Shown: piece by piece, positions 21,320 to 50,355 of the stretch | How the letters are laid out: each line of letters begins with the position of its first letter | Position numbering within the stretch: the stretch's first letter is position 1 | Source: Trichosphaerium sp. ATCC 40318 | Taxonomy: Eukaryota; Protista; Tubulinea | Direction of reading: 5' to 3' | NCBI GenBank assembly: GCA_038496445.1 | Contig: JALMLS010000450.1 | Span: forward strand, 204,603-268,602 | DNA length: 64,000 bases | The notes under the pieces: generated by a model | What the model saw: only the letters and a program-made list of their open reading frames with translations | Databases searched by the model: none | Told to the model about the DNA's origin: nothing | Position numbers and translations under genes: made by a program

Positions 21320-21967
21320 TGAAAAATCTGCCAAACAAAAAAAACCCAACTCAGTCGGAAAAACTATTTTGAAAATCGAAGACTGCTAATGCTTATTGCA
21401 CACGTGTACACTTGTAAAAAGAAAAGAAAAAACAACACCTCTCACCTATATGTTTAACTATGGCGTAATTCAAATAAAAATACTTCAATGCTACACTTGC
21501 AGTTACTCCTTCTTTTTACTCCTTTTTTTGGAAAACAAAAAAACCAAATAGTCACTAATATAGTACGTTATCCTACAATATTAATAAAGTATACAATTAC
21601 TTTCGGGATTTGGCGTTAGAATACTTGTTGTAATAATTACATTATTTACTGGTTGCACTTGACTTAAGCCGCATAGCTATTTACTGGAATTTTCAGGCAT
21701 TTCCCTTAAAAGGTTACCCTTTTTCAGTTGAAGATAGAAACTAGCTGGAGTAAACTGCTAGCGTATTGAAGTTTCTTATATTAGAACACAATGTATAAAC
21801 TGGTAGCTACAGACTCACAGAAGATTTTGTGCGCGCACAGACAAGTTGACTTTGGAATTTCGGTGAATGCTCTATTTGTTGATTGTGGATATCCTGTTTT
21901 ATTCGTAGTACTGAATCAAGGAGGTAGAACTACTACCCAGCATATGTTAAGTTGCTTCAATAATGAG

Positions 21968-23130
21968 TTAACTTTCGGCTACTAACTTTAATCCTCTGAC
22001 AGAGAACGTTCCATCTGAAGCCAACTGAGTGCCGGAAATAGAAACAACTCGAACCTATAAAAAAAAACCATTAAATCACTTCAACGTGTATTCTACATAC
22101 CGAAGGTATTCTCCATTCCTTCAAAGTTATAGCATTGCCGTCAATAGTAGTCAATACGCTCTACCAAGGACAAGTCAACAGACCGTTACAATACAAAACT
22201 AATCAACTAAAACAGATTTAAAGTACTTACCAATACTATATCATCATAAATAAGTCTGCCACTTCTGAACGCAAGTGAGGATCCCATCCACAAACCAAGT
22301 TGCCCTCCAAAATCGCTTACAAGATTCACGACACTATAGACTTGGCCAGCTAAACAGTGTTAAATTGAGTTGGCCAAGCTGATTTTGACCACTTGCATGA
22401 GTCTGGAGTATACGTGTATCCTCCTGTGTACTGCATTCCTTCGAATACTGCGCTAAAAGTACTACTCCGCAGTGATACTTGGTAAGGAAATTGATGTGGT
22501 GGAGGCGGTGGCAGAGCATCTGTCGAAGATTGTGTTGAACCATGTGCTATTGGTTCAAAGTCGTCAAAAGAGAAAGTGATCCGTTGTACAGCACTATTTT
22601 GAGAAACCTCATAGGTGATTTCTTTAGGATAACACTGAAGCCTGAGATTAGACAATGAAAATCTTAATAGTTCGTACACCAAACAGCATGTGCGATACGC
22701 CATGAGTCGAACTAGACAAACCCCACTCTTTCTGAAGTGTCTTAGTACCCATGTTGTATTCATGAGAAACGTACCAAAATGACGTTTTTTCTACCTATTC
22801 TAGGAGATTGAATCATTTGGTTTTGCCAAGACTCAAATACATCGTCGTTGATTAATCCTCGTTCTAATGTAAAATCGCGAGTACTATATACTAAGAAGCT
22901 GTTAGAGCAGTTTGGACGATTAATAGTAGTAACAGAAGCTGCGCCTTACATCCATCAACGAACATAGCTTCAGGGATCTCTGCAATACCAGCAGAAAATA
23001 AATCAATGTCATTGGGATGATTATAATCTGAGCTTATAAACTGTAGCGTAAAGCGTGAAGAGCTGCCTTCTACTAACCATATTGTAATCGCAGAGTAGTA
23101 CGCAAACGTAAGAAGTGTTGCTAACCTCAT
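21968..23130 (-). CDS. Secreted protein (287 aa, 7 exons) with two tandem T4 gp19/Afp1-5-like phage tail-tube domains
   Basis: Exons 23130-22950, 22890-22775, 22740-22678, 22634-22397, 22349-22231, 22160-22101 and 22054-21968 sum to 864 nt with no internal stop. Signal peptide MRLATLLTFAYYSAITIWLVEG. Domain 1: RFTLQF...AGIAEI...FTLERGLINDDVFESWQNQ...RKNVILTLQKEWG...MLFGCYPKE...SAVQRITFSFDDFE. Then a Pro linker. Domain 2: YQVSL...AVFEGM...YSVVNL...LGLW...DIVLSVL...DG...EWRI...SISGTQLASDGTFSVRGLKLVAE. Confidence 0.7.
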
Positions 23131-23161
23131 TTCAGTATCTTCAAAAAACAATCAGCAATGT

Positions 23162-23220
23162 CACGTGAAATTATTGGAAGAGTATGTATATTCACTATCT
23201 ATCATTAGCTTGGTCACGTG
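23162..23220. promoter_or_regulatory. Pair of CACGTG (E-box/G-box) motifs just upstream of the tail-tube-like gene
   Basis: CACGTG at 23162 and 23215, 32 and 85 nt upstream of the ATG at 23130. The same motif lies upstream of several other genes in the window. Confidence 0.4.
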
Positions 23221-23526
23221 GAATTGAATTTCCGCAAACTCCATATTTTTTCAAGTAGCACTCTTGCTTGGACTAAATCGCTTCATTGAAAACCGTTGGT
23301 TAACAAATATATTTAGTCTACTGGGACATCTCTTAAAGCACTCATGACTAATATCAATCCACGCTATCATCATTCTAACAGGCTAAAATCAGAGCTGGCT
23401 TAAAATAATCTCTATACAGCTCATCGCCTTATATGTAGATCACAACACCAATATACACTATCTCGAACGACGCACTTGTATTTCTTTTTATTTTTCTATG
23501 TACACGTGACAAAAACCAAAAAGGTT

Positions 23527-24208
23527 TTACTGTGCACTTCCTTGCTTTTTTGTCAGCTCCTTTGCATCGTCGCTCGATATTATAGGTGGTGCAAACCAGT
23601 TATTACCATCCTTCATCTCTTCTTGAGCCCATTTATCAATCCTGGCACTAAGTCTTTGTTTAGATTGTGTAACAAAAAAAAAAAACGAGTACTTACAATT
23701 TCGTGCCATAAGCAAGGTCGTAGTTAAACGCTGTCACTATAGATAACCCCACAAATGGTCCCCACAAGAAAGGATTTTTCTGTACAATGTGTAAAGCGCT
23801 TGCAGCACATCCAACAAGAGCTGCACTGCCTAAAATGAAAATTACTAACTGCTTAAATAACGACAACCCGAAAACGTATTAGATTACGAAATGAAGCTCA
23901 TAAAAGCGTTTTTGTGGTAATAAAAGGCGTACCGCCGAACCACATTGTTCTATCTTTTGCCATTGCTTTTTGATAAGCCATTTGTTGCCTCATCATGCGT
24001 TGTTGCCCTCGCATCATGTTTCTAACCGCGAGTTAGTCAATTGTCGTTTGCTAGTCGTAAAATAGTTGGAGATAACCAATACATGGTAAAATAAGTGCTT
24101 TCTAGCATTAGTAGTGGTTACGTACATCCATTGAAGCTCCATCATCTCTTTTTGTAGACTCCGTTGGGTTTTAACCATTGACTCTGCTATTGAGTTACCT
24201 ATTCCCAT
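23527..24208 (-). CDS. PLGRKT: Plasminogen receptor KT (DUF2368) family small membrane protein
   Basis: MGIGNSIAESMVKTQRSLQKEMM...RQQMAYQKAMAKDRTMWFG...PFVGLSIVTAFNYDLAYGTKL matches the family pattern (RQMAMQIA...; P...L...YDLxYG). Confidence 0.75.
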
Positions 24209-24591
24209 GTTGCTTTATACGTTGTGTTATTTGTAGTTTGATTATTGCGATGTGTAACAGTATAGAAAACTCGTTTATTTTCGGCACTTTTGTTGTGCCA
24301 CCGGTGGATTTATTGTTCAAAATTGAAAAACTGTAGGACAGTATTCTCACAACTATTGTACAATAAAATTGTATTAAAACAAAAAAATACCAAACAAAGC
24401 AAGAATACGGGCAATACATTTGTCCAAAAACGAATAATTTTCATAAAAACGCAATATTATCAAAAAAAGGTGATTTTACCACGTGGATACTATTAGTAAC
24501 CAAAATATTCCACGTGGAGTATTGTGTACTAAAAACCTATTACCAACAATCTCAGGTACATGTACAACTTTATTTAATGATATATAATAAG

Positions 24592-30400: not shown

Positions 30401-33400
30401 TTAGTAGGCGAGGATAAAACACTAAATTCTGGATCAATTATTCGCAGGGCACTAACTGTTAATTGTGACAAAAAGGATCTGGCAGCTAAGTACCCGTCTG
30501 TACGTGTTTTTTTTTTGAAAGTTTGACATGTCAAACCAAATCTCACTTACATTTTAGGAGAACCCTGATCAACTGGCCTGCAGAGCTCTTGTTATGGAGC
30601 TTTGTGTTACAGAACGTACTTACATCAAAATGTTATCAGCTTTGGTGCGATATGCGTACAAACCTCTTCGGTACGACTTGATCATGTTCCATGATATTCA
30701 TTAATATTATTTTTTAGCATGAGATCAAAACTGGTTACAGTAGAACAGCTCGAAGTACTGTTCCCTAATTTGGAAGAGATATTGGCTTTTCATAAACGTC
30801 AGCTTCCTGCATTAGAGGAGTGCGTTAAGCATTGGTCACCTACTACTAGTAGTATTGCAACAATCTACCTTGCCTGGGTATGTTTTTTTAAGACACTTTT
30901 ATTTTTCTCTGAAAATACAAGTAACATGCTAATGATTACGTATAGCAACCATATTTCATGTTGTATGCAGATATTATCAATAACCAATCTCGAGCAAGTA
31001 CGTTGCTCCGACATATCCTACAAAATGGTGCTTGTGCTCAAATTCAAGAGGTATAACAATTTTTTTTATGAAATACTTGCTTTAACTCACGTTTTTTAAA
31101 GCAATTGACCCATAATGCATCAATCAAGGGTCTCAACTTCAAATCTCTACTTTGCTTACCTCCTCGCCGTCTTATTCGTTACACTGAAATTTTGGCTGCT
31201 TTAAAGAAACACACACCGGATGATCACCAGGACGCTAAGAAATTGGTACTTTAAAATAATTTTATTGTAGGTTGTTTGTAACTTTGTTTTTTATTAGACT
31301 GAAGCAATTCGAGCAATGAAAGATGTATCTATTCATATCAAAAATAGTAGAGCAGAGCGTAAGCTTGTAAACAGAGCAAATGAAATAGAAAAGAGACTCA
31401 TGGAGGTAAAGGAAGGAGAATTATTTACAAAAGAAAGGCGTCTTGTTGACGAACTTGATGTTTACCTCATAATAAGTTCACAAGGTATGCTACTTGTCGT
31501 ACCTGTTGTGCTTTATAGAAGGTGTTAACCTTGCTTTATTAGATTCTCTTCACCACAGTGCAATATTCTTAACTGATGCGCTACTTCTCTTTCAATCAAA
31601 TGGGAACAGTAGTGCACATTACTCTGTTGTTGCTTATATGCCGATTTGTGATGTTGAAGTTCTTATTCTGCAAAGAGAACAAGGCATACCTATTAGTAGA
31701 GCTGATACAGGAGAGCCTATGGATAGTAACCATTTCCTTGAATTACGTTATAAAGACAGAAGTTATGTTCTAGCTATGACGAATGATGCCGACTTGAAAA
31801 GATTCATGACAATTTGTGCAAGATTACGACATTCGCTACAAACAAAGTTCTGGGATGCTATTATACCTAAAGGAGCTAAAGTTAAGCCTGCAGCCCAACA
31901 TACTTGTGCTCGTGTTGGCGAAGAATTCCTTGTCTTTGGAGGCCATATGGAGGGCACATACGATAACTTCTTGCATAGCTACAAAGATGGTACTTGCATG
32001 TTTTTTTTTCAAACAAAATTCTTTCTGTGTCTGTTTGTTGCTTTTATCGAAATTGATTGATTTTCATTTCGCTGTGGATCTGGTTATGGCGATATCTTCT
32101 GATATTTTTTTTAGGTAAAATGACGTATATTGAGACTACAGGGATAACACCTCCTCCTGTTGCTGAACATTCTATTGCTGTTTTAAAGGATCAAGTTATT
32201 ATTTTTGGTGGAGTCTGTGCTACAGATGTGAGTGGTTTTACTGATTCTGTTTACATATTACATACTTCCAACAACTCATGGATGGTCCCTTGGATAAAGG
32301 TACGGCTCATAAAGACAAGTTCTTTTTGTTTAAGGTGGTTACCTTTTTTTTTTTCTTTCTTTTTTACAAAACTTTATTTTGTTCACAAGTTGTCTTAGGG
32401 AAGCCGGTATAATAAACCAGTTGGTAGAGCTGGACATTGTAGTGTTGTTGTAGAATCCACTGAAGAATTAATTATGTTCGGTGGGTATAATGGCGTGAGG
32501 CTGTTTAATGATATTTTTACACTTAACATACCTAAAATGCGTTGGCTACGAGTTGAAGTCAGAACAACCTCCCCAAAGCCTCGTTATGGTCACTGTGCTG
32601 TAAATTTGGACGATAAGGTATACGTTTTTGGTGGAAAGCTTGAAACTGGTGCCTGTGCGAATGATTTATGGCTTTATGATCCAGGTACGTTTCTTTCTTT
32701 TTTTGTTGAATACCCAAACCTAAATTTTGAACTAGTTCAAGTTACTTGGACTGAATTAAAGCCTGATGGATTTGTTCCTGCTGCCAGATATTATATGGCT
32801 GCTACAGCTCTTAGTAAGACTACATTTGCAATGTATGGTGGTCGTGGTAATGACGTTTATTCTGACTTGTACATCTATGATGCTGGTGCGTTTCAAGTTC
32901 TTTTGTTTAGTTTCTTTTTGCGCTTTCTTTGTGCTAATTTTTTTTATCCAATAGTTACCAACACATGGCTAAGGTGTGATCTTCAAGTACCTCTGCAGCC
33001 AAAGTTTGGCCATACCTTAAGTGCGAGCCATGAAACACCAGCAAAGAAACTATACATAACAGGTGGTATGACAATCGATGCTATTACTGGTGAGCCTATT
33101 ATGACCAATGATGTTGTTGAACTTAATAACCTTGGTACGTTATTTGAACCACCACAAAGCATAGGTCGTAGAGTTAACACTTACCTTGTTTATAGCGCAA
33201 ATCAAGACATTTGGAGAAGAAAAGCTTGCGGTGAAAATGAACGCTGTTATCTCCGGGGAGGCTGAGCCTGTTGTACCTACCAGTTTGTACGTTTTTTTCT
33301 GATGTATTTATGCGACCTGATGCCGCTTTTTTTATTCACCGTAATGGTGTCTTATTGTTCTTTATAGTGTAAGTAAGCTATGTGGTGATGCACCTGCTGA

Positions 33401-36201: not shown

Positions 36202-36400
36202 TTCTTTAACAAAGCATTGAAATGCAAAAGAACAGTATCAAGTCATTTTGTTGAATTTAAAAGCCACGGTTGAAATTCCACAATTTTCAATTTTTCAGAG
36301 AATATCTTTTCGTGCATTAGTTATGCAGAAATAAAGTGGTATGATTAAATGCTGCCTTTTTGGCGCTGTCATTGGAGTATTGCTGTTAATAACAACAAGC

Positions 36401-36469
36401 GCCTGTATAGCTCAATTGGCAGAGCAGTGGTTTTCTAAGCCATTGGTTGCAGGTTCAATCCCTATAGGC
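36401..36469 (+). tRNA. tRNA-Arg(UCU)-like gene, probably a pseudogene (3' side of T-stem deleted)
   Basis: Acceptor stem GCCTGTA/TATAGGC; D-arm GCTC-AATTGGCA-GAGC; anticodon arm GTGGT-TTTCTAA-GCCAT; T-arm GCAGG-TTCAATC-CC, lacking about 3 nt (TGC). Confidence 0.7.
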
Positions 36470-36483
36470 TAACAATAGTTTCT

Positions 36484-43467: not shown

Positions 43468-44265
43468 CTAATTAATTTTGCGCCTACCAGTGCACTTTTT
43501 CCTATAGCCATTATGATAGTAGATAGCGTGTACACCTGCCAATGCCTTCAAACCTTCATATGTTACATTTGTAAGTGATAAAGTAATCGTATGTACACCT
43601 GCCAATGCCTTCAAACCTTCATCTGTTACATTTGTAAGTGATATACAAATATCATGTACACCTGCCAATGCTGCAATGCCATTGTCTGTTATTGACTCAC
43701 AACTATACAAGGAGATTGAGTGTACACCTGCCAATGCCTTCAAACCTTCATCTGTTACATTTGTATCTGATAAATCAATCTCATATACACCTGCCAATGC
43801 TGCAATGCCATTGTCTGTTATTGATTTACAATTACATAGGTTGATAGTGTGTACACCTGTCAATACCTTCAAACCTTTATCTGTTACATTTGTAAGTGAT
43901 AAATTAATCTTATGTACACCTGCCAATGCCTTCAAACCTTCATCTGTTACTTTTGTAAGTGATAAATTGATATCATGTACACCTGCTAATGCCGCAATAT
44001 TGTCGTTTGTTAGCGCACATCGAGTGAGATCAATAGTTGTATTGTGGAGTAATGGACTACCAGAAAGCATTTGAACTTCGTTTGTGTTTTTAATACTGAT
44101 ACTACCATACCCAACATGGTTATGAACAATATCTTGTAAAAGATGGCACGTTTGGGCTGTACGAAGTGTATATGTCCCTTGTTTGAGAATATGGACTATT
44201 AACTCAATTGGTAGCGCAACAAGGTCGAATACTTGGTTGAACTGTGTTTGTTTTTTCTTTTCCAT
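43468..44265 (-). CDS. Intronless F-box/leucine-rich repeat protein
   Basis: LVALPIELIVHILK...AQTCHLL (F-box-like), then about 8 units of 21-22 aa (LAGVHxINLSxTxVTDEGLKA) encoded by 63/66-bp tandem repeats. Confidence 0.85.
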   Translation of the reverse strand: MEKKKQTQFNQVFDLVALPIELIVHILKQGTYTLRTAQTCHLLQDIVHNHVGYGSISIKNTNEVQMLSGSPLLHNTTIDLTRCALTNDNIAALAGVHDINLSLTKVTDEGLKALAGVHKINLSLTNVTDKGLKVLTGVHTINLCNCKSITDNGIAALAGVYEIDLSDTNVTDEGLKALAGVHSISLYSCESITDNGIAALAGVHDICISLTNVTDEGLKALAGVHTITLSLTNVTYEGLKALAGVHAIYYHNGYRKKCTGRRKIN

Positions 44266-45008
44266 TGTATGCTCGCCGTTAGTTTTCGTTGAGCAAATGT
44301 TATAAAGTAAAAGGAGAACTAGAGGGATAAATGCGTTTAGCTGGGTGATATTAAACACTTAATCACAGTTCTTACCGACATTAAGCCACGTTGTACACGC
44401 TTATGTAAACACGGGCAGAGTATGTTGTACCGGTTAATGATTTTGACTTTAAGATACTGTGATATAACAGTTGAGTGGTTTAAGTTTTTATTAAACACAC
44501 GTGTATCAAGACACTTGCTTTACATTACTCAAAAAGAAAACAAACAAAAGAACAACATACTACAACTTCATATACTTCAAACTCTAACTCCTTCTGCTAT
44601 ATCGTACCGTCTGGCTTGAGACCTTTCACAAAGAGTTAAATCACCAGGACGTAGTAGTATATCTATGTTATAAGCGCACTTTGTACTGTCCAGGGTTCAT
44701 TGTGAACCAATCACAAAGATTGAATCATCACTTGCTCCTGGTAAAAAACAGTTCGTGGAAATCACGTGACAAAAAACAGAGCTGCTTTAAGCACTGCGTC
44801 TTGCCTTCTCTGCTTCAAAAGTATCACATTACGGTATAAAACAGCATCTTGTTTGAGTTATATTGTGGGACAGCCTGTTATACGTTCTAAGCCTACAAAC
44901 AACCTAATAAAAGTACTCAAAAAAGGTAACTAGTACGAAATGGTGAACAATCTAATCGGTTGATTTTATTTTAGACAAGTGCTACAGAGGAAAAATTCAA
45001 GAATGGCA

Positions 45009-48860: not shown

Positions 48861-49278
48861 AGTTTTCGAATTGCTTTTTTTCTTGTTTGTCTACAAAGTC
48901 TCTTTTTACACAGAGCGGAAGCCAACATGAAGGTACCATCGAAATCTTGCGGTTTGATTGTTGGTGCGTTGTTGGTGTATGTAGAATCGTCTTGGTTGCT
49001 GTAAAACAACTGCAAAAGCAACTTTTTTTCAGCACGTGAAAGTTGAGTGCCATGAGCTCGGCTGATATGAAAGCTAGCTTTACAAGCAAACTAAAATACA
49101 GAAGGCATATCTTGGGAGTACTCAGGTAACATGCTAATAGAGTTAAAGCACATTGTTTGTGCGCGGAATTTGTTCGCCTAGTACATTTCAGTGATTCTAA
49201 AAATAGAGTTGTTAATTAAGTTTGTCTTTCTCCTTCGGTTTTAATACACCCTTAGTGACAATTTGCAATAGCATAAAC

Positions 49279-50355
49279 ATGGAAGCCGTTAACACCAGTT
49301 TAACATCATTGACATTAAATACAACACTACTGGACGTTACAGACGACGGTATACTTGAAATCCTATCGAATTTAACGTACGATGAGCTTAGAGGCGTACA
49401 AATAGTTTCAAAGCGCTTCAGTACACTTGTACGAGTAGAAAGACGGCAGTACCCATCGCTACCTGAGCATTTAAGCATAAAGAGAGAAGGAACGGTCAAT
49501 AGACAAAAACTTTGCGTTAAAATAGAACCATTTAACAACAGCACGACATATACACTTCAAATAAGGCGTCAGCCGCACGTACATGATCGAGGCTATGATG
49601 ACTACTTTGAGGGGACCCACAAGGCTTATAAAGAACCTCGTGATATCGTCTTATCTCGTGACAAATGTGCCAAAGAAACAGAAGGTGGTTGCACATTTCT
49701 TGTTCCTGTTACTATCTATAAAGGCTTTATTGAGTTTACTTTGAATGTCTCTGTTGCATGTGAAAAGAATGGAAGGAAGCTATTGAGTAAAATACATAAC
49801 ATAGCATTACTATCGGACTTCTTTGATCCTGGATGCTTTGATGGAAACGCAAGAATTGCAATGTCAAATGATGGCGATACGAAAAAAGCTAAAGATATTC
49901 GTATTGGTGATAAAGTATTATCTTCTTCAGGAACAATGCAGACTGTTGTTCATGTTGACGCTATTCGCAGGAACGTAAAGAAACGTATGGTAAAGCTTGG
50001 AGACTTTTGGATAACAAGAGGACACCCCGTGCTAATCAGAGGAGAGTGGTACGCTTTGGTTACAAACATAGAGCAAACACAGTTGAAAATCAATAACAAC
50101 CTAATTACTAGGTACCGGCCTGATGAACTAAAGGATGATGTTCTACGCATATCTGATGGCTTGTATAACTTTGTTTTGGATGACGAACATACCATACTAG
50201 TTGGAGAACAAGAAGTATACACGTGTTGTACTTTGGGAAAGTACTGTGGTGAAAGGCTTGAACAATTACATCCTCAACAAAACGAAAAGTATGGAGCTAG
50301 CATTCTAAAAGTAAACTATGAACATCAGAAAAGGAATAGAAAGGTTGAATACTGA
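49279..50355 (+). CDS. F-box protein with C-terminal Hint (Vint-type) autoprocessing domain; one in-frame 63-nt intron (50049-50111)
   Basis: F-box: LLDVTDDGILEILSNLTYDELRGVQIVSKRFSTL. Hint block A: PG/CFDGNARIAMS...KAKDIRIGDKV. Block B: WITRGHPV. Vint C-terminal motif: LYNFVLDDEHTILV...CCTLG. Confidence 0.8.
   Translation: MEAVNTSLTSLTLNTTLLDVTDDGILEILSNLTYDELRGVQIVSKRFSTLVRVERRQYPSLPEHLSIKREGTVNRQKLCVKIEPFNNSTTYTLQIRRQPHVHDRGYDDYFEGTHKAYKEPRDIVLSRDKCAKETEGGCTFLVPVTIYKGFIEFTLNVSVACEKNGRKLLSKIHNIALLSDFFDPGCFDGNARIAMSNDGDTKKAKDIRIGDKVLSSSGTMQTVVHVDAIRRNVKKRMVKLGDFWITRGHPVLIRGEWYALVTNIEQTQLKINNNLITRYRPDELKDDVLRISDGLYNFVLDDEHTILVGEQEVYTCCTLGKYCGERLEQLHPQQNEKYGASILKVNYEHQKRNRKVEY

What the first reader, a model, noticed from the sequence alone, without database searches (positions are those of the whole stretch)
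21968..23130. Domesticated phage/eCIS tail-tube gene: secreted, 6 introns, two tandem gp19-like domains
Seen: a clean 7-exon, 287-aa frame with a signal peptide; the ORF track shows it only as fragments. Established: T4 gp19/Afp1-Afp5 family tube proteins carry the pattern F-x-L...AG(I/F)...ITLERG...D..FE.W.N...RK(D/N)(I/V).L....G...(R/G)C(W/Y)(V/P).E...A(I/V)Q.I...(W/F)E, recalled from memory. Domain 1 (FTLERGLINDDVFESWQNQ...RKNVILTLQKEWG...LFGCYPKE...AVQRITFSFDDFE) matches it in order and spacing. After a PPPPP linker, domain 2 repeats the fold pattern more divergently. Inference: a bacterial contractile-injection or phage tube gene was acquired, duplicated internally, intronised and routed to the secretory pathway. 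Three such chains could form a pseudo-hexameric ring. The long loop before TLERG that stacks tube rings looks shortened, so it may form capped rings, pores or a new filament type, for example in prey killing, extrusomes or the cell coat. No sheath or baseplate genes are visible in this window.
Basis: partly seen in the sequence, partly recalled or inferred. Interest (0 to 1): 0.92.

Follow-up and report, generated by a model that had tools for sequence, protein, structure and literature searches.

The report
Spliced eukaryotic gene with phage-tube-like domain
A real, expressed, six-intron eukaryotic gene encodes a probably secreted 284-residue protein whose first half looks like a phage or injection-system tail-tube protein, while the supposed second tube domain is unproven and instead carries a short piece of a DEG/ENaC sodium-channel pore helix.

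Summary
The gene is real. One spliced cDNA contig (run X1) covers window 23142-21898 on the minus strand with six introns. It gives one ORF of 284 aa (ATG 23130, stop ending 21968), not 287. Two junctions need correcting: the intron 2 acceptor lies 9 nt further on, so the quoted "TLQ" is absent, and intron 4 is GC-AG.

First half (residues 23-150): the tail-tube reading is supported but not proven.
- Exon 2 alone hits Pfam Phage_T4_gp19 (E 1.3e-3, 19 bits, below the 28.2 cutoff) and NCBIfam TIGR02241.
- Protein-language-model neighbours of two separate exons are tail-tube families.
- My own tube HMMs give P 6.5e-8 and 1.4e-8 for residues 23-150, though the second model's members were picked by the motif.
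- The signal sits mostly in about 35 residues around TLERG...W...RKNVIL.

Second half: it is not detectably a tube domain (P 0.01-0.4). Exon 5 carries a 24-residue DEG/ENaC pre-TM2/TM2a "GSS" motif above Pfam's ASC cutoff (26.9 vs 23.6 bits, E 3e-6).

I found no relatives of exon 4 and no sheath or baseplate genes in the window.

The spliced protein has no reference, so it could not be folded or scanned whole. First-reader notes on other pieces of this genome describe phage tail-fibre-like spliced genes, but none a tube.

The parts
21898..23142 (-). Whole transcript: 7 exons at 23142-22950, 22890-22775, 22731-22678, 22634-22397, 22349-22231, 22160-22101 and 22054-21898. CDS runs 23130-21968 and encodes 284 aa.
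   Evidence: A spliced RNA contig shows six joints, and a SMART-type template-switch oligo (recognised from my own knowledge) is attached at 23142. Translation.
23065..23130 (-). N-terminal hydrophobic leader, residues 1-22. Likely a cleavable signal peptide, with V-E-G before the predicted cut. A signal anchor is not excluded.
   Evidence: Highest Kyte-Doolittle 19-residue window of the protein is here (1.41), and no second TM-grade window exists. SignalP is not available, so the cleavage site is by inspection.
22536..23064 (-). First half (residues 23-150, across exons 1-4): tail-tube-like (PF06841-like) domain.
   Evidence: Own three-clade tube HMM gives 18.6 bits, P 6.5e-8, 0 of 3000 shuffles. 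The 87-sequence HMM gives 20.4 bits. Afp1-clade HMM gives P 3.5e-4 and semi-global z 4.9. The signal is concentrated in residues ~59-125.
22778..22879 (-). Core tube motif in exon 2 (RDFTLERGLINDDVFESW...RKNVI).
   Evidence: Pfam Phage_T4_gp19 E 1.3e-3, 19 bits, profile 51-85 of 134. TIGR02241 E 4e-3 and CIS5_fam E 0.037. 68 of 100 ESM Atlas neighbours are PF06841 clusters. The same motif sits at the same place in phage tube genes next to a sheath gene.
22536..22634 (-). C-terminal strands of the first half (start of exon 4: CYPKEITYEV...AVQRITFSFDDFE).
   Evidence: Every ESM Atlas neighbour that carries a family name is a phage tail-tube family: DUF2001, Tail_tube, Phage_tube_2, Phi812 and others. 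The Afp1-clade HMM aligns AVQRITF to NEIAVQEITL, P about 0.02-0.03. Not significant with the broader HMMs.
22482..22535 (-). Ser/Thr- and Pro-rich linker (residues 151-168, contains PPPPP).
   Evidence: Read directly from the translation.
22350..22396 (-). Intron 4, 47 nt, with a non-canonical GC-AG boundary, directly before the channel-like exon.
   Evidence: The joint 22349/22397 has ends CT..GC on the + strand. Sequence.
22273..22344 (-). DEG/ENaC-type pre-TM2/TM2a motif with a 'GSS' filter triplet (residues 199-222, QVYSVVNLVSDFGGQLGLWMGSSL) in exon 5.
   Evidence: Pfam ASC 26.9 bits against a cutoff of 23.6, E 3.1e-6, profile 423-446 of 455. NCBIfam deg-1 E 7e-7 and ENaC E 1.9e-6. All 23 PDB hits are DEG/ENaC channels at the start of TM2. 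The motif is absent from 232 fetched proteins, nearly all of them tube proteins.
21971..22272 (-). C-terminal tail (residues 223-284: end of exon 5, exons 6 and 7). Family unassigned, with only a faint collinear likeness to the C-terminal half of tube proteins.
   Evidence: Semi-global PSSM z 2.2, 9 of 300 shuffles. phmmer against Afp5-like tubes P about 0.01. Afp5-clade HMM P about 0.05. No Pfam, NCBIfam or PHROGs hit for exons 6 or 7.

Best explanation
This is a genuine nuclear gene of a poorly sampled eukaryote. It is transcribed from about 23142, spliced at six short introns (43-70 nt) and encodes a 284-residue protein.

Shown:
- The exon structure, the single long ORF and a hydrophobic N-terminal leader.
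- A first half whose core matches contractile-tail/CIS tube proteins (PF06841/TIGR02241).
- A 24-residue DEG/ENaC channel motif in exon 5.

Inferred:
- The first half descends from a phage or bacterial contractile-injection tube gene taken up by horizontal transfer. It was then given a leader and introns.
- The second half is not a clean copy of that domain. At least part of it comes from the 3' end of a DEG/ENaC-type gene, so the gene is a chimera.
- The product most likely enters the secretory pathway and acts as a soluble or surface-attached beta-sandwich protein that may self-associate through the tube-domain interfaces.
- It cannot be part of a contractile machine here, because no partner genes are nearby and its inter-ring hairpin is shortened.
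For: Gene model and 5' end.

Leader, single Cys and no second TM-grade segment.

Tube-likeness of the first half:
- Pfam PF06841 is the only hit of exon 2 (E 1.3e-3).
- NCBIfam gives TIGR02241 and CIS5_fam at the matching profile positions.
- ESM Atlas neighbours of two non-overlapping exons are tail-tube families.
- phmmer against IMG/VR tube proteins gives P 3e-6 to 7e-6 across the exon 1/2 junction.
- Own HMMs give P 6.5e-8 and 1.4e-8, with 0 of 3000 shuffles reaching the first score.
- The nearest clade is a bona fide tube gene lying between a sheath gene and a baseplate gene.

Channel motif.

Eukaryotic setting: spliced neighbour genes with filamin, Kelch, LRR, Vint and DUF2368 domains.
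Against: - No whole-protein profile scan or structure prediction could be run on the spliced protein.
- Exon 2's Pfam score (19 bits) is below the family cutoff (28.2).
- Outside the ~35-residue motif, the broad HMMs see nothing significant: pre-motif P 0.13-0.37, post-motif P 0.05-0.15.
- Exon 1 gave only LRR noise in the Atlas.
- Solved tube proteins were not hit by phmmer with exon 2.
- The metagenome-derived HMM was built from sequences chosen for sharing the motif, so its score is biased upward.
- No orthologue is available to test selection.
- The chimera origin is inferred from one 24-residue motif.
Confidence: 0.55

Rival explanations
1. Both halves are tube domains (an internal duplication), three chains could close a pseudo-hexameric ring as in T5 pb6 or gp27/VgrG, and the DEG/ENaC-like stretch is a chance or convergent look-alike sitting in the second domain's hairpin.
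For: - The last ~55 residues align collinearly with the C-terminal half of Afp1/Afp5-type tubes.
- Semi-global PSSM test of residues 166-284 gives z 3.2, with 2 of 300 shuffles reaching it.
- The tail alone is reached by 9 of 300 shuffles.
- The two halves have similar lengths, joined by a proline linker.
Against: - hhalign P 0.36.
- hmmsearch P 0.045-0.12 with four different tube HMMs.
- The two halves show no significant similarity to each other.
- The head of the second half gives no signal.
- The channel motif is far too specific for chance: E 3e-6, and all 23 PDB hits are DEG/ENaC at one site. It is absent from 232 fetched proteins, nearly all of them tube proteins.
Confidence: 0.2
2. No phage ancestry. 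The gene is a lineage-specific orphan, or a strongly reduced DEG/ENaC derivative, and the TLERG...W stretch resembles tube proteins only by chance or convergence.
For: - The sequence signal is concentrated in about 35 residues.
- The Pfam score is below the cutoff.
- Flanking parts are not significant with broad HMMs.
- Exon 4 finds no relative among 1.84 billion representatives.
- The DEG/ENaC hit is statistically stronger than the tube hit.
Against: - Two non-overlapping exons independently land on tail-tube families in the Atlas.
- Matches sit at the correct, collinear profile positions in three libraries.
- The ASC profile matches nothing in exons 1-4.
- There is one Cys and no second TM segment, so this is not a channel.
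Confidence: 0.15
3. A transcribed but functionless young chimera: a fragment of transferred tube gene joined to a decayed DEG/ENaC 3' fragment, whose ORF is open by recency rather than by selection.
For: - The channel motif is followed by charged residues where TM2b should be.
- No orthologues or paralogues were found.
- One non-canonical GC-AG intron precedes the channel-like exon.
Against: - One ORF fills 852 of 937 transcript bases across seven exons with all joints in frame.
- The contig is assembled at a depth similar to the neighbour gene's contig (11.7 against 12.9).
- A leader is placed exactly in front of the first tube strand.
Confidence: 0.1

Closest known systems
Contractile-tail / extracellular contractile injection system inner tube proteins (Pfam PF06841 Phage_T4_gp19; NCBIfam TIGR02241; e.g. 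Serratia Afp1/Afp5, T4 gp19, IMG/VR phage tube L150:2917-3429)
   Same: - The core motif (V/F)TLERG-x3-DD-x-F-x2-W, followed by R/K-K-D/N-hydrophobic strand, sits at the same profile positions.
- A 'P-x-E/S' strand and an 'AVQ-x-IT' strand follow in the same order as in Afp1.
- The domain size is about 130 residues.
   Different: - It is eukaryotic, spliced and preceded by a secretory-type leader.
- The segment before the motif is about 12 residues shorter than in Afp1 (shortened hairpin).
- Its score is below Pfam's cutoff.
- No sheath, baseplate, spike or tape-measure genes are nearby.
- It is fused to a further 135 residues.
DEG/ENaC (ASC, PF00858) channels: FaNaC, ENaC, ASIC
   Same: Residues 199-222 match the pre-TM2/TM2a segment and the G/S-x-S filter. 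In the printed alignment to annelid FaNaC1, 15 of 23 positions are identical.
   Different: - There is no TM2b: R-S-G-R follows the motif.
- There is no Cys-rich ectodomain (one Cys in all).
- The ASC profile matches nothing elsewhere in the protein.
- The length is 284 aa against 450-700 aa.

This is a fragment of the family, not a channel.
Tandem tube-domain proteins that form trimeric pseudo-hexamers (phage T5 pb6; T4 gp27/VgrG hub). Named from established knowledge, not tested here.
   Same: Two segments of similar length in one chain, the first tube-like.
   Different: The second segment is not demonstrably a tube domain here, and oligomeric state is unknown.
Horizontally acquired bacterial or phage genes that gained introns and leaders in eukaryotes (general phenomenon). 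Unchecked first-reader notes on the same genome mention phage tail-fibre-like spliced genes.
   Same: A foreign-looking domain inside a normally spliced, expressed nuclear gene among ordinary eukaryotic neighbours.
   Different: In the held paper library, a search for the family's Pfam accession found five papers, none about a eukaryotic gene by their titles. Two broader tail-tube searches showed no paper on a eukaryotic tail-tube gene among those listed.

Membership tests
PF06841 Phage_T4_gp19 / CIS inner tube | Whole-domain score at or above Pfam's gathering cutoff (28.2 bits) | tested here: inconclusive
   Only single exons could be scanned. Exon 2 alone gives 19 bits, E 1.3e-3, and the other exons give no hit. 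The spliced protein has no reference and could not be scanned.
PF06841 Phage_T4_gp19 / CIS inner tube | Collinear match over the whole ~135-residue domain | tested here: inconclusive
   Own HMMs align profile positions 57-122 of 151 and 60-143 of 149 in the Afp1 clade. The N-terminal 40 residues are not significant.
PF06841 Phage_T4_gp19 / CIS inner tube | Tube fold (beta-sandwich plus helix) assembling into hexameric rings | not testable with these tools
No model was made.
PF06841 Phage_T4_gp19 / CIS inner tube | Long hairpin between the SGL strand and the ITL-x-(K/R)G strand | tested here: not met
   By my count on the sequences, the segment is 22 residues here against 34 in Afp1.
PF06841 Phage_T4_gp19 / CIS inner tube | Neighbouring sheath, baseplate or spike genes | tested here: not met
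   tblastn of Afp1-17 and eight T4 tail proteins against the window found nothing better than E 0.027. The phage relative L150 does have sheath-tube-baseplate order.
DEG/ENaC (PF00858 ASC) | Score above Pfam's gathering cutoff (23.6 bits) | tested here: met
   Exon 5 scores 26.9 bits, E 3.1e-6, but only over profile positions 423-446 of 455. NCBIfam deg-1 and ENaC scores are far below their full-length cutoffs.
DEG/ENaC (PF00858 ASC) | Two transmembrane helices flanking a large Cys-rich ectodomain | tested here: not met
   There is one Cys. The only strongly hydrophobic window is the N-terminal leader. The motif region peaks at Kyte-Doolittle 0.92 and is followed by R-S-G-R. No ASC hit in exons 1-4, 6 or 7.
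Tandem tube-domain proteins (T5 pb6 / gp27-VgrG type) | Two recognisable tube domains in one chain | tested here: inconclusive
   For the second half: hhalign P 0.36, hmmsearch P 0.045-0.12, semi-global test 2 of 300 shuffles. Similarity between the two halves is not significant.

The most novel reading that the evidence does not exclude
A eukaryote has domesticated a phage or injection-system tail-tube protein as a secreted, ring- or tube-forming protein. It has welded this to the pore-lining TM2a/selectivity-filter segment of a DEG/ENaC channel. The result would be a new kind of extracellular pore or filament protein built from a viral tube module and an animal-type channel module.
Probability: 0.1. 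Interest if true: 0.85.

Novelty: new variant of a known kind. Interest (0 to 1): 0.6.

Why it matters
Phage tail-tube proteins are the universal conduit module of contractile tails, type VI secretion and injection systems. My searches of the held paper library turned up no report of one as a eukaryotic gene. If the fold is confirmed, this would be a case of a viral structural module re-used on its own in the eukaryotic secretory pathway. Its fusion to a fragment of a DEG/ENaC channel would be a clear example of gene birth by joining foreign and host pieces. If the fold is not confirmed, the finding reduces to an orphan secreted protein with a channel-derived motif.

Tried and rejected
Searches that found nothing:
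- phmmer of exon 4 against 1.84 billion representatives gave only a spurious repeat protein. The protein is therefore not in the collection, and no protein id exists for it.
- A word search with the exon 5 segment found no candidates.
- tblastn of exon 2 against 50,697 phage records gave only chance hits.
- phmmer against PDB: exon 2 gave nothing, exon 4 gave chance KillerRed hits, and the exon 4 tail gave nothing.
- PHROGs gave no hits for any exon.
- IMG/VR scans with the exon 2 segment and with a strict motif pattern were blank.

Searches that were too narrow:
- The protein search with Afp1 and the genome-contig scan returned only close relatives of Afp1, too narrow for a good profile.

Ideas considered and dropped:
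- That exon 4's tail continues the DEG/ENaC homology. This was my own reading of an F-E-x-x-Q-Y pattern. No Pfam or PDB support.
- That an ancestral TM2 continues in another frame of exon 5. No Pfam hit in the other frames.
- That a weak tblastn hit at 31034-30942 is a paralogue. It spans an exon junction of the query, so it is chance.

Organism identification failed:
- Rfam and tRNA scans found only one tRNA.
- The F-box/Vint ORF has only four unnamed relatives.

Full report
**Gene model.**
- The region holds a minus-strand gene. The ORF listing shows it only as fragments.
- One public run (X1, kept as Logan contigs) holds 47% of the sampled words. When laid on 21500-23600 it gives a single 958-nt contig that skips six stretches.
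- The exons are 23142-22950, 22890-22775, 22731-22678, 22634-22397, 22349-22231, 22160-22101 and 22054-21898.
- The introns are 59, 43, 43, 47, 70 and 46 nt. Five are GT-AG, and intron 4 is GC-AG.
- The contig carries 21 extra letters beyond 23142. Their reverse complement is the 3' part of a SMART template-switch oligo (my own knowledge). So 23142 is probably the capped 5' end, 12 nt before the ATG at 23130.
- The joined sequence has one ORF of 284 aa ending with TAA at 21970-21968. It fills 852 of 937 bases.
The length is 284 aa, not 287.

**Leader.**
- Residues 1-22 (M-R, then 18 mostly hydrophobic residues, then V-E-G) give the highest hydropathy window of the protein, 1.41.
- Nothing else reaches transmembrane grade. 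The mature part has one Cys and no N-x-S/T site.
- A cleavable signal peptide is the likeliest reading. This is by inspection only, because SignalP is not available.

**First half (residues 23-150).** The library tools therefore saw single exons only.
- Exon 2 (38 aa) has one Pfam hit, Phage_T4_gp19: E 1.3e-3, 19 bits, profile 51-85 of 134, below the 28.2-bit cutoff.
- NCBIfam gives TIGR02241 (E 4e-3) and the CIS5 inner-tube adaptor family (E 0.037) at equivalent positions.
- In the ESM Atlas, 68 of the 100 nearest clusters to exon 2 are PF06841. The rest include Phage_TTP_2 and TssD/Hcp.
- For the first 33 residues of exon 4, a separate piece, every neighbour with a family name is a phage tail-tube family. 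Scores there are 0.87-0.90, so these are leads and not proof.
- Exon 1 gave only LRR noise.

**Tests on the spliced protein in the sandbox.**
- I built the spliced protein from window.fa and compared it with tube proteins fetched by the tools: Afp1/Afp5 of pADAP, 120 Afp1 relatives, IMG/VR phage tubes and metagenome ORFs sharing the motif.
- The Afp1-clade HMM gives 6.5 bits and P 3.5e-4 for residues 23-150. None of 2000 shuffles reached it, and the alignment is collinear from TLERG to AVQRITF.
- With the same HMM, exons 3-4 alone score P about 0.02-0.03 at the right place.
- A three-clade HMM gives 18.6 bits, P 6.5e-8, with 0 of 3000 shuffles reaching it.
- phmmer against single IMG/VR tubes gives P 3e-6 to 7e-6, with alignments that cross the exon 1/2 junction.
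- That phage clade is a true tube: L150:2917-3429 scores 116.5 bits on PF06841. It lies between a sheath gene and a T4_baseplate gene.
- Caveat: an 87-sequence HMM gives 20.4 bits, but its members were chosen for sharing the motif. With it, the parts before and after the motif are not significant: P 0.13-0.37 and 0.05-0.15.
- So the evidence rests mainly on about 35 residues, plus weaker and partly independent support from the C-terminal strands.
- I put the tube ancestry of this half at about 0.8.

**Second half (residues ~166-284).**
- Exon 5, translated with its true 5' boundary, hits Pfam ASC at 26.9 bits. That is above the 23.6-bit cutoff, with E 3.1e-6 over profile 423-446 of 455.
- It also hits NCBIfam deg-1 (E 7e-7) and ENaC (E 1.9e-6).
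- Against PDB sequences, all 23 hits up to E 10 are DEG/ENaC channels, and all are at the start of TM2. One example is FaNaC1 YTRNQLVSDIGGQLGLWVGISLI.
- This is the TM2a helix and the G/S-x-S filter (family knowledge). Here it is followed by F-R-S-G-R, so no membrane helix is completed.
- The motif occurs in none of 232 fetched proteins, nearly all of them tube proteins, and nowhere else in the window.
- The ASC profile matches no other exon, so the protein is not a channel.
- Tube tests on this half: hhalign P 0.36; hmmsearch P 0.045-0.12 with four HMMs; semi-global PSSM z 3.2 with 2 of 300 shuffles; tail alone z 2.2.
- The last ~55 residues do align collinearly with the C-terminal half of Afp1/Afp5-type tubes. 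A very diverged second tube domain is therefore not excluded, but it is not shown.
- The two halves are not significantly similar to each other.

**Context.**
- The window is ordinary eukaryotic DNA, 37% G+C, with exons of this gene at 40% and introns at 36%.
- The upstream neighbour, also on the minus strand, has its own RNA contig and a DUF2368 match.
- Kelch, LRR and F-box/Vint ORFs lie further away.
- tblastn with Afp1-17 and eight T4 tail proteins finds no sheath, spike or baseplate relative in the window. There is no paralogue of the gene either.
- Exon 4 has no relative among 1.84 billion cluster representatives.
- The organism is unknown and thinly sampled.
- DEG/ENaC genes are known in animals and, by phylogenetic evidence, in a few unicellular heterokonts and Tunicaraptor (PMC10507113). 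So the motif says little about the host.
- Unchecked first-reader notes on other pieces of this genome mention spliced phage tail-fibre-like genes and phage-type enzymes.

**How it most likely works.**
- Shown: it is an expressed, spliced gene with a leader, a tube-like core and a channel-derived motif.
- Inferred: a tube gene from a contractile-tailed phage or a bacterial injection system entered the genome and gained a leader and introns. It became joined to sequence from the 3' end of a DEG/ENaC-type gene. The GC-AG intron sits just before that piece.
- The product probably enters the secretory pathway. Whatever it does would rest on the tube module's ability to self-associate.
- With a hairpin about 12 residues shorter than in Afp1 and no sheath or baseplate, a contractile role is unlikely.
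- Rings, short stacks or a new surface or filament role are possible but untested.

**Limits.**
- No structure prediction, whole-protein Pfam/HHpred scan, SignalP run or test of selection could be done.

Noticed in passing
window 22350-22396 (-): Intron 4 of the gene uses a GC-AG boundary, while the other five introns are GT-AG. It lies directly before the channel-like exon.
   Followed up: partly
window 23473-24214 (-): The upstream neighbour gene on the same strand has its own RNA contig ending near 23473. One of its exons matches DUF2368 (E 1.6e-5). The gap to the tube-like gene's start is only about 330 bp.
   Followed up: partly
window 49222-50355 (+): A single long ORF with a Vint-type Hint domain (Pfam E 2.7e-13). 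Only four unnamed relatives exist among 5.8 billion clusters, one of them from EukProt.
   Followed up: partly
window 36400-36471 (+): tRNA-Arg (TCT), the only Rfam gathering-level match in the window.
   Followed up: yes
window 31494-33265 (+) and 43471-44358 (-): Kelch-repeat ORFs (up to E 7e-29) and an LRR_6 ORF (E 6e-18). These are ordinary eukaryotic repeat proteins.
   Followed up: no
L150 1079-4325 (IMG/VR contig IMGVR_UViG_3300025070_000202): A phage clade whose tube protein carries almost the same VTLERG-x3-DD-x-F-x2-W motif as the eukaryotic gene. The gene order is sheath, tube, T4_baseplate-like. 93 metagenome stretches share the motif.
   Followed up: partly
P0001: The only hit of exon 4 in the representative library is a 990-aa tandem-repeat protein with no aligned stretch. 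It is a low-complexity artefact.
   Followed up: yes
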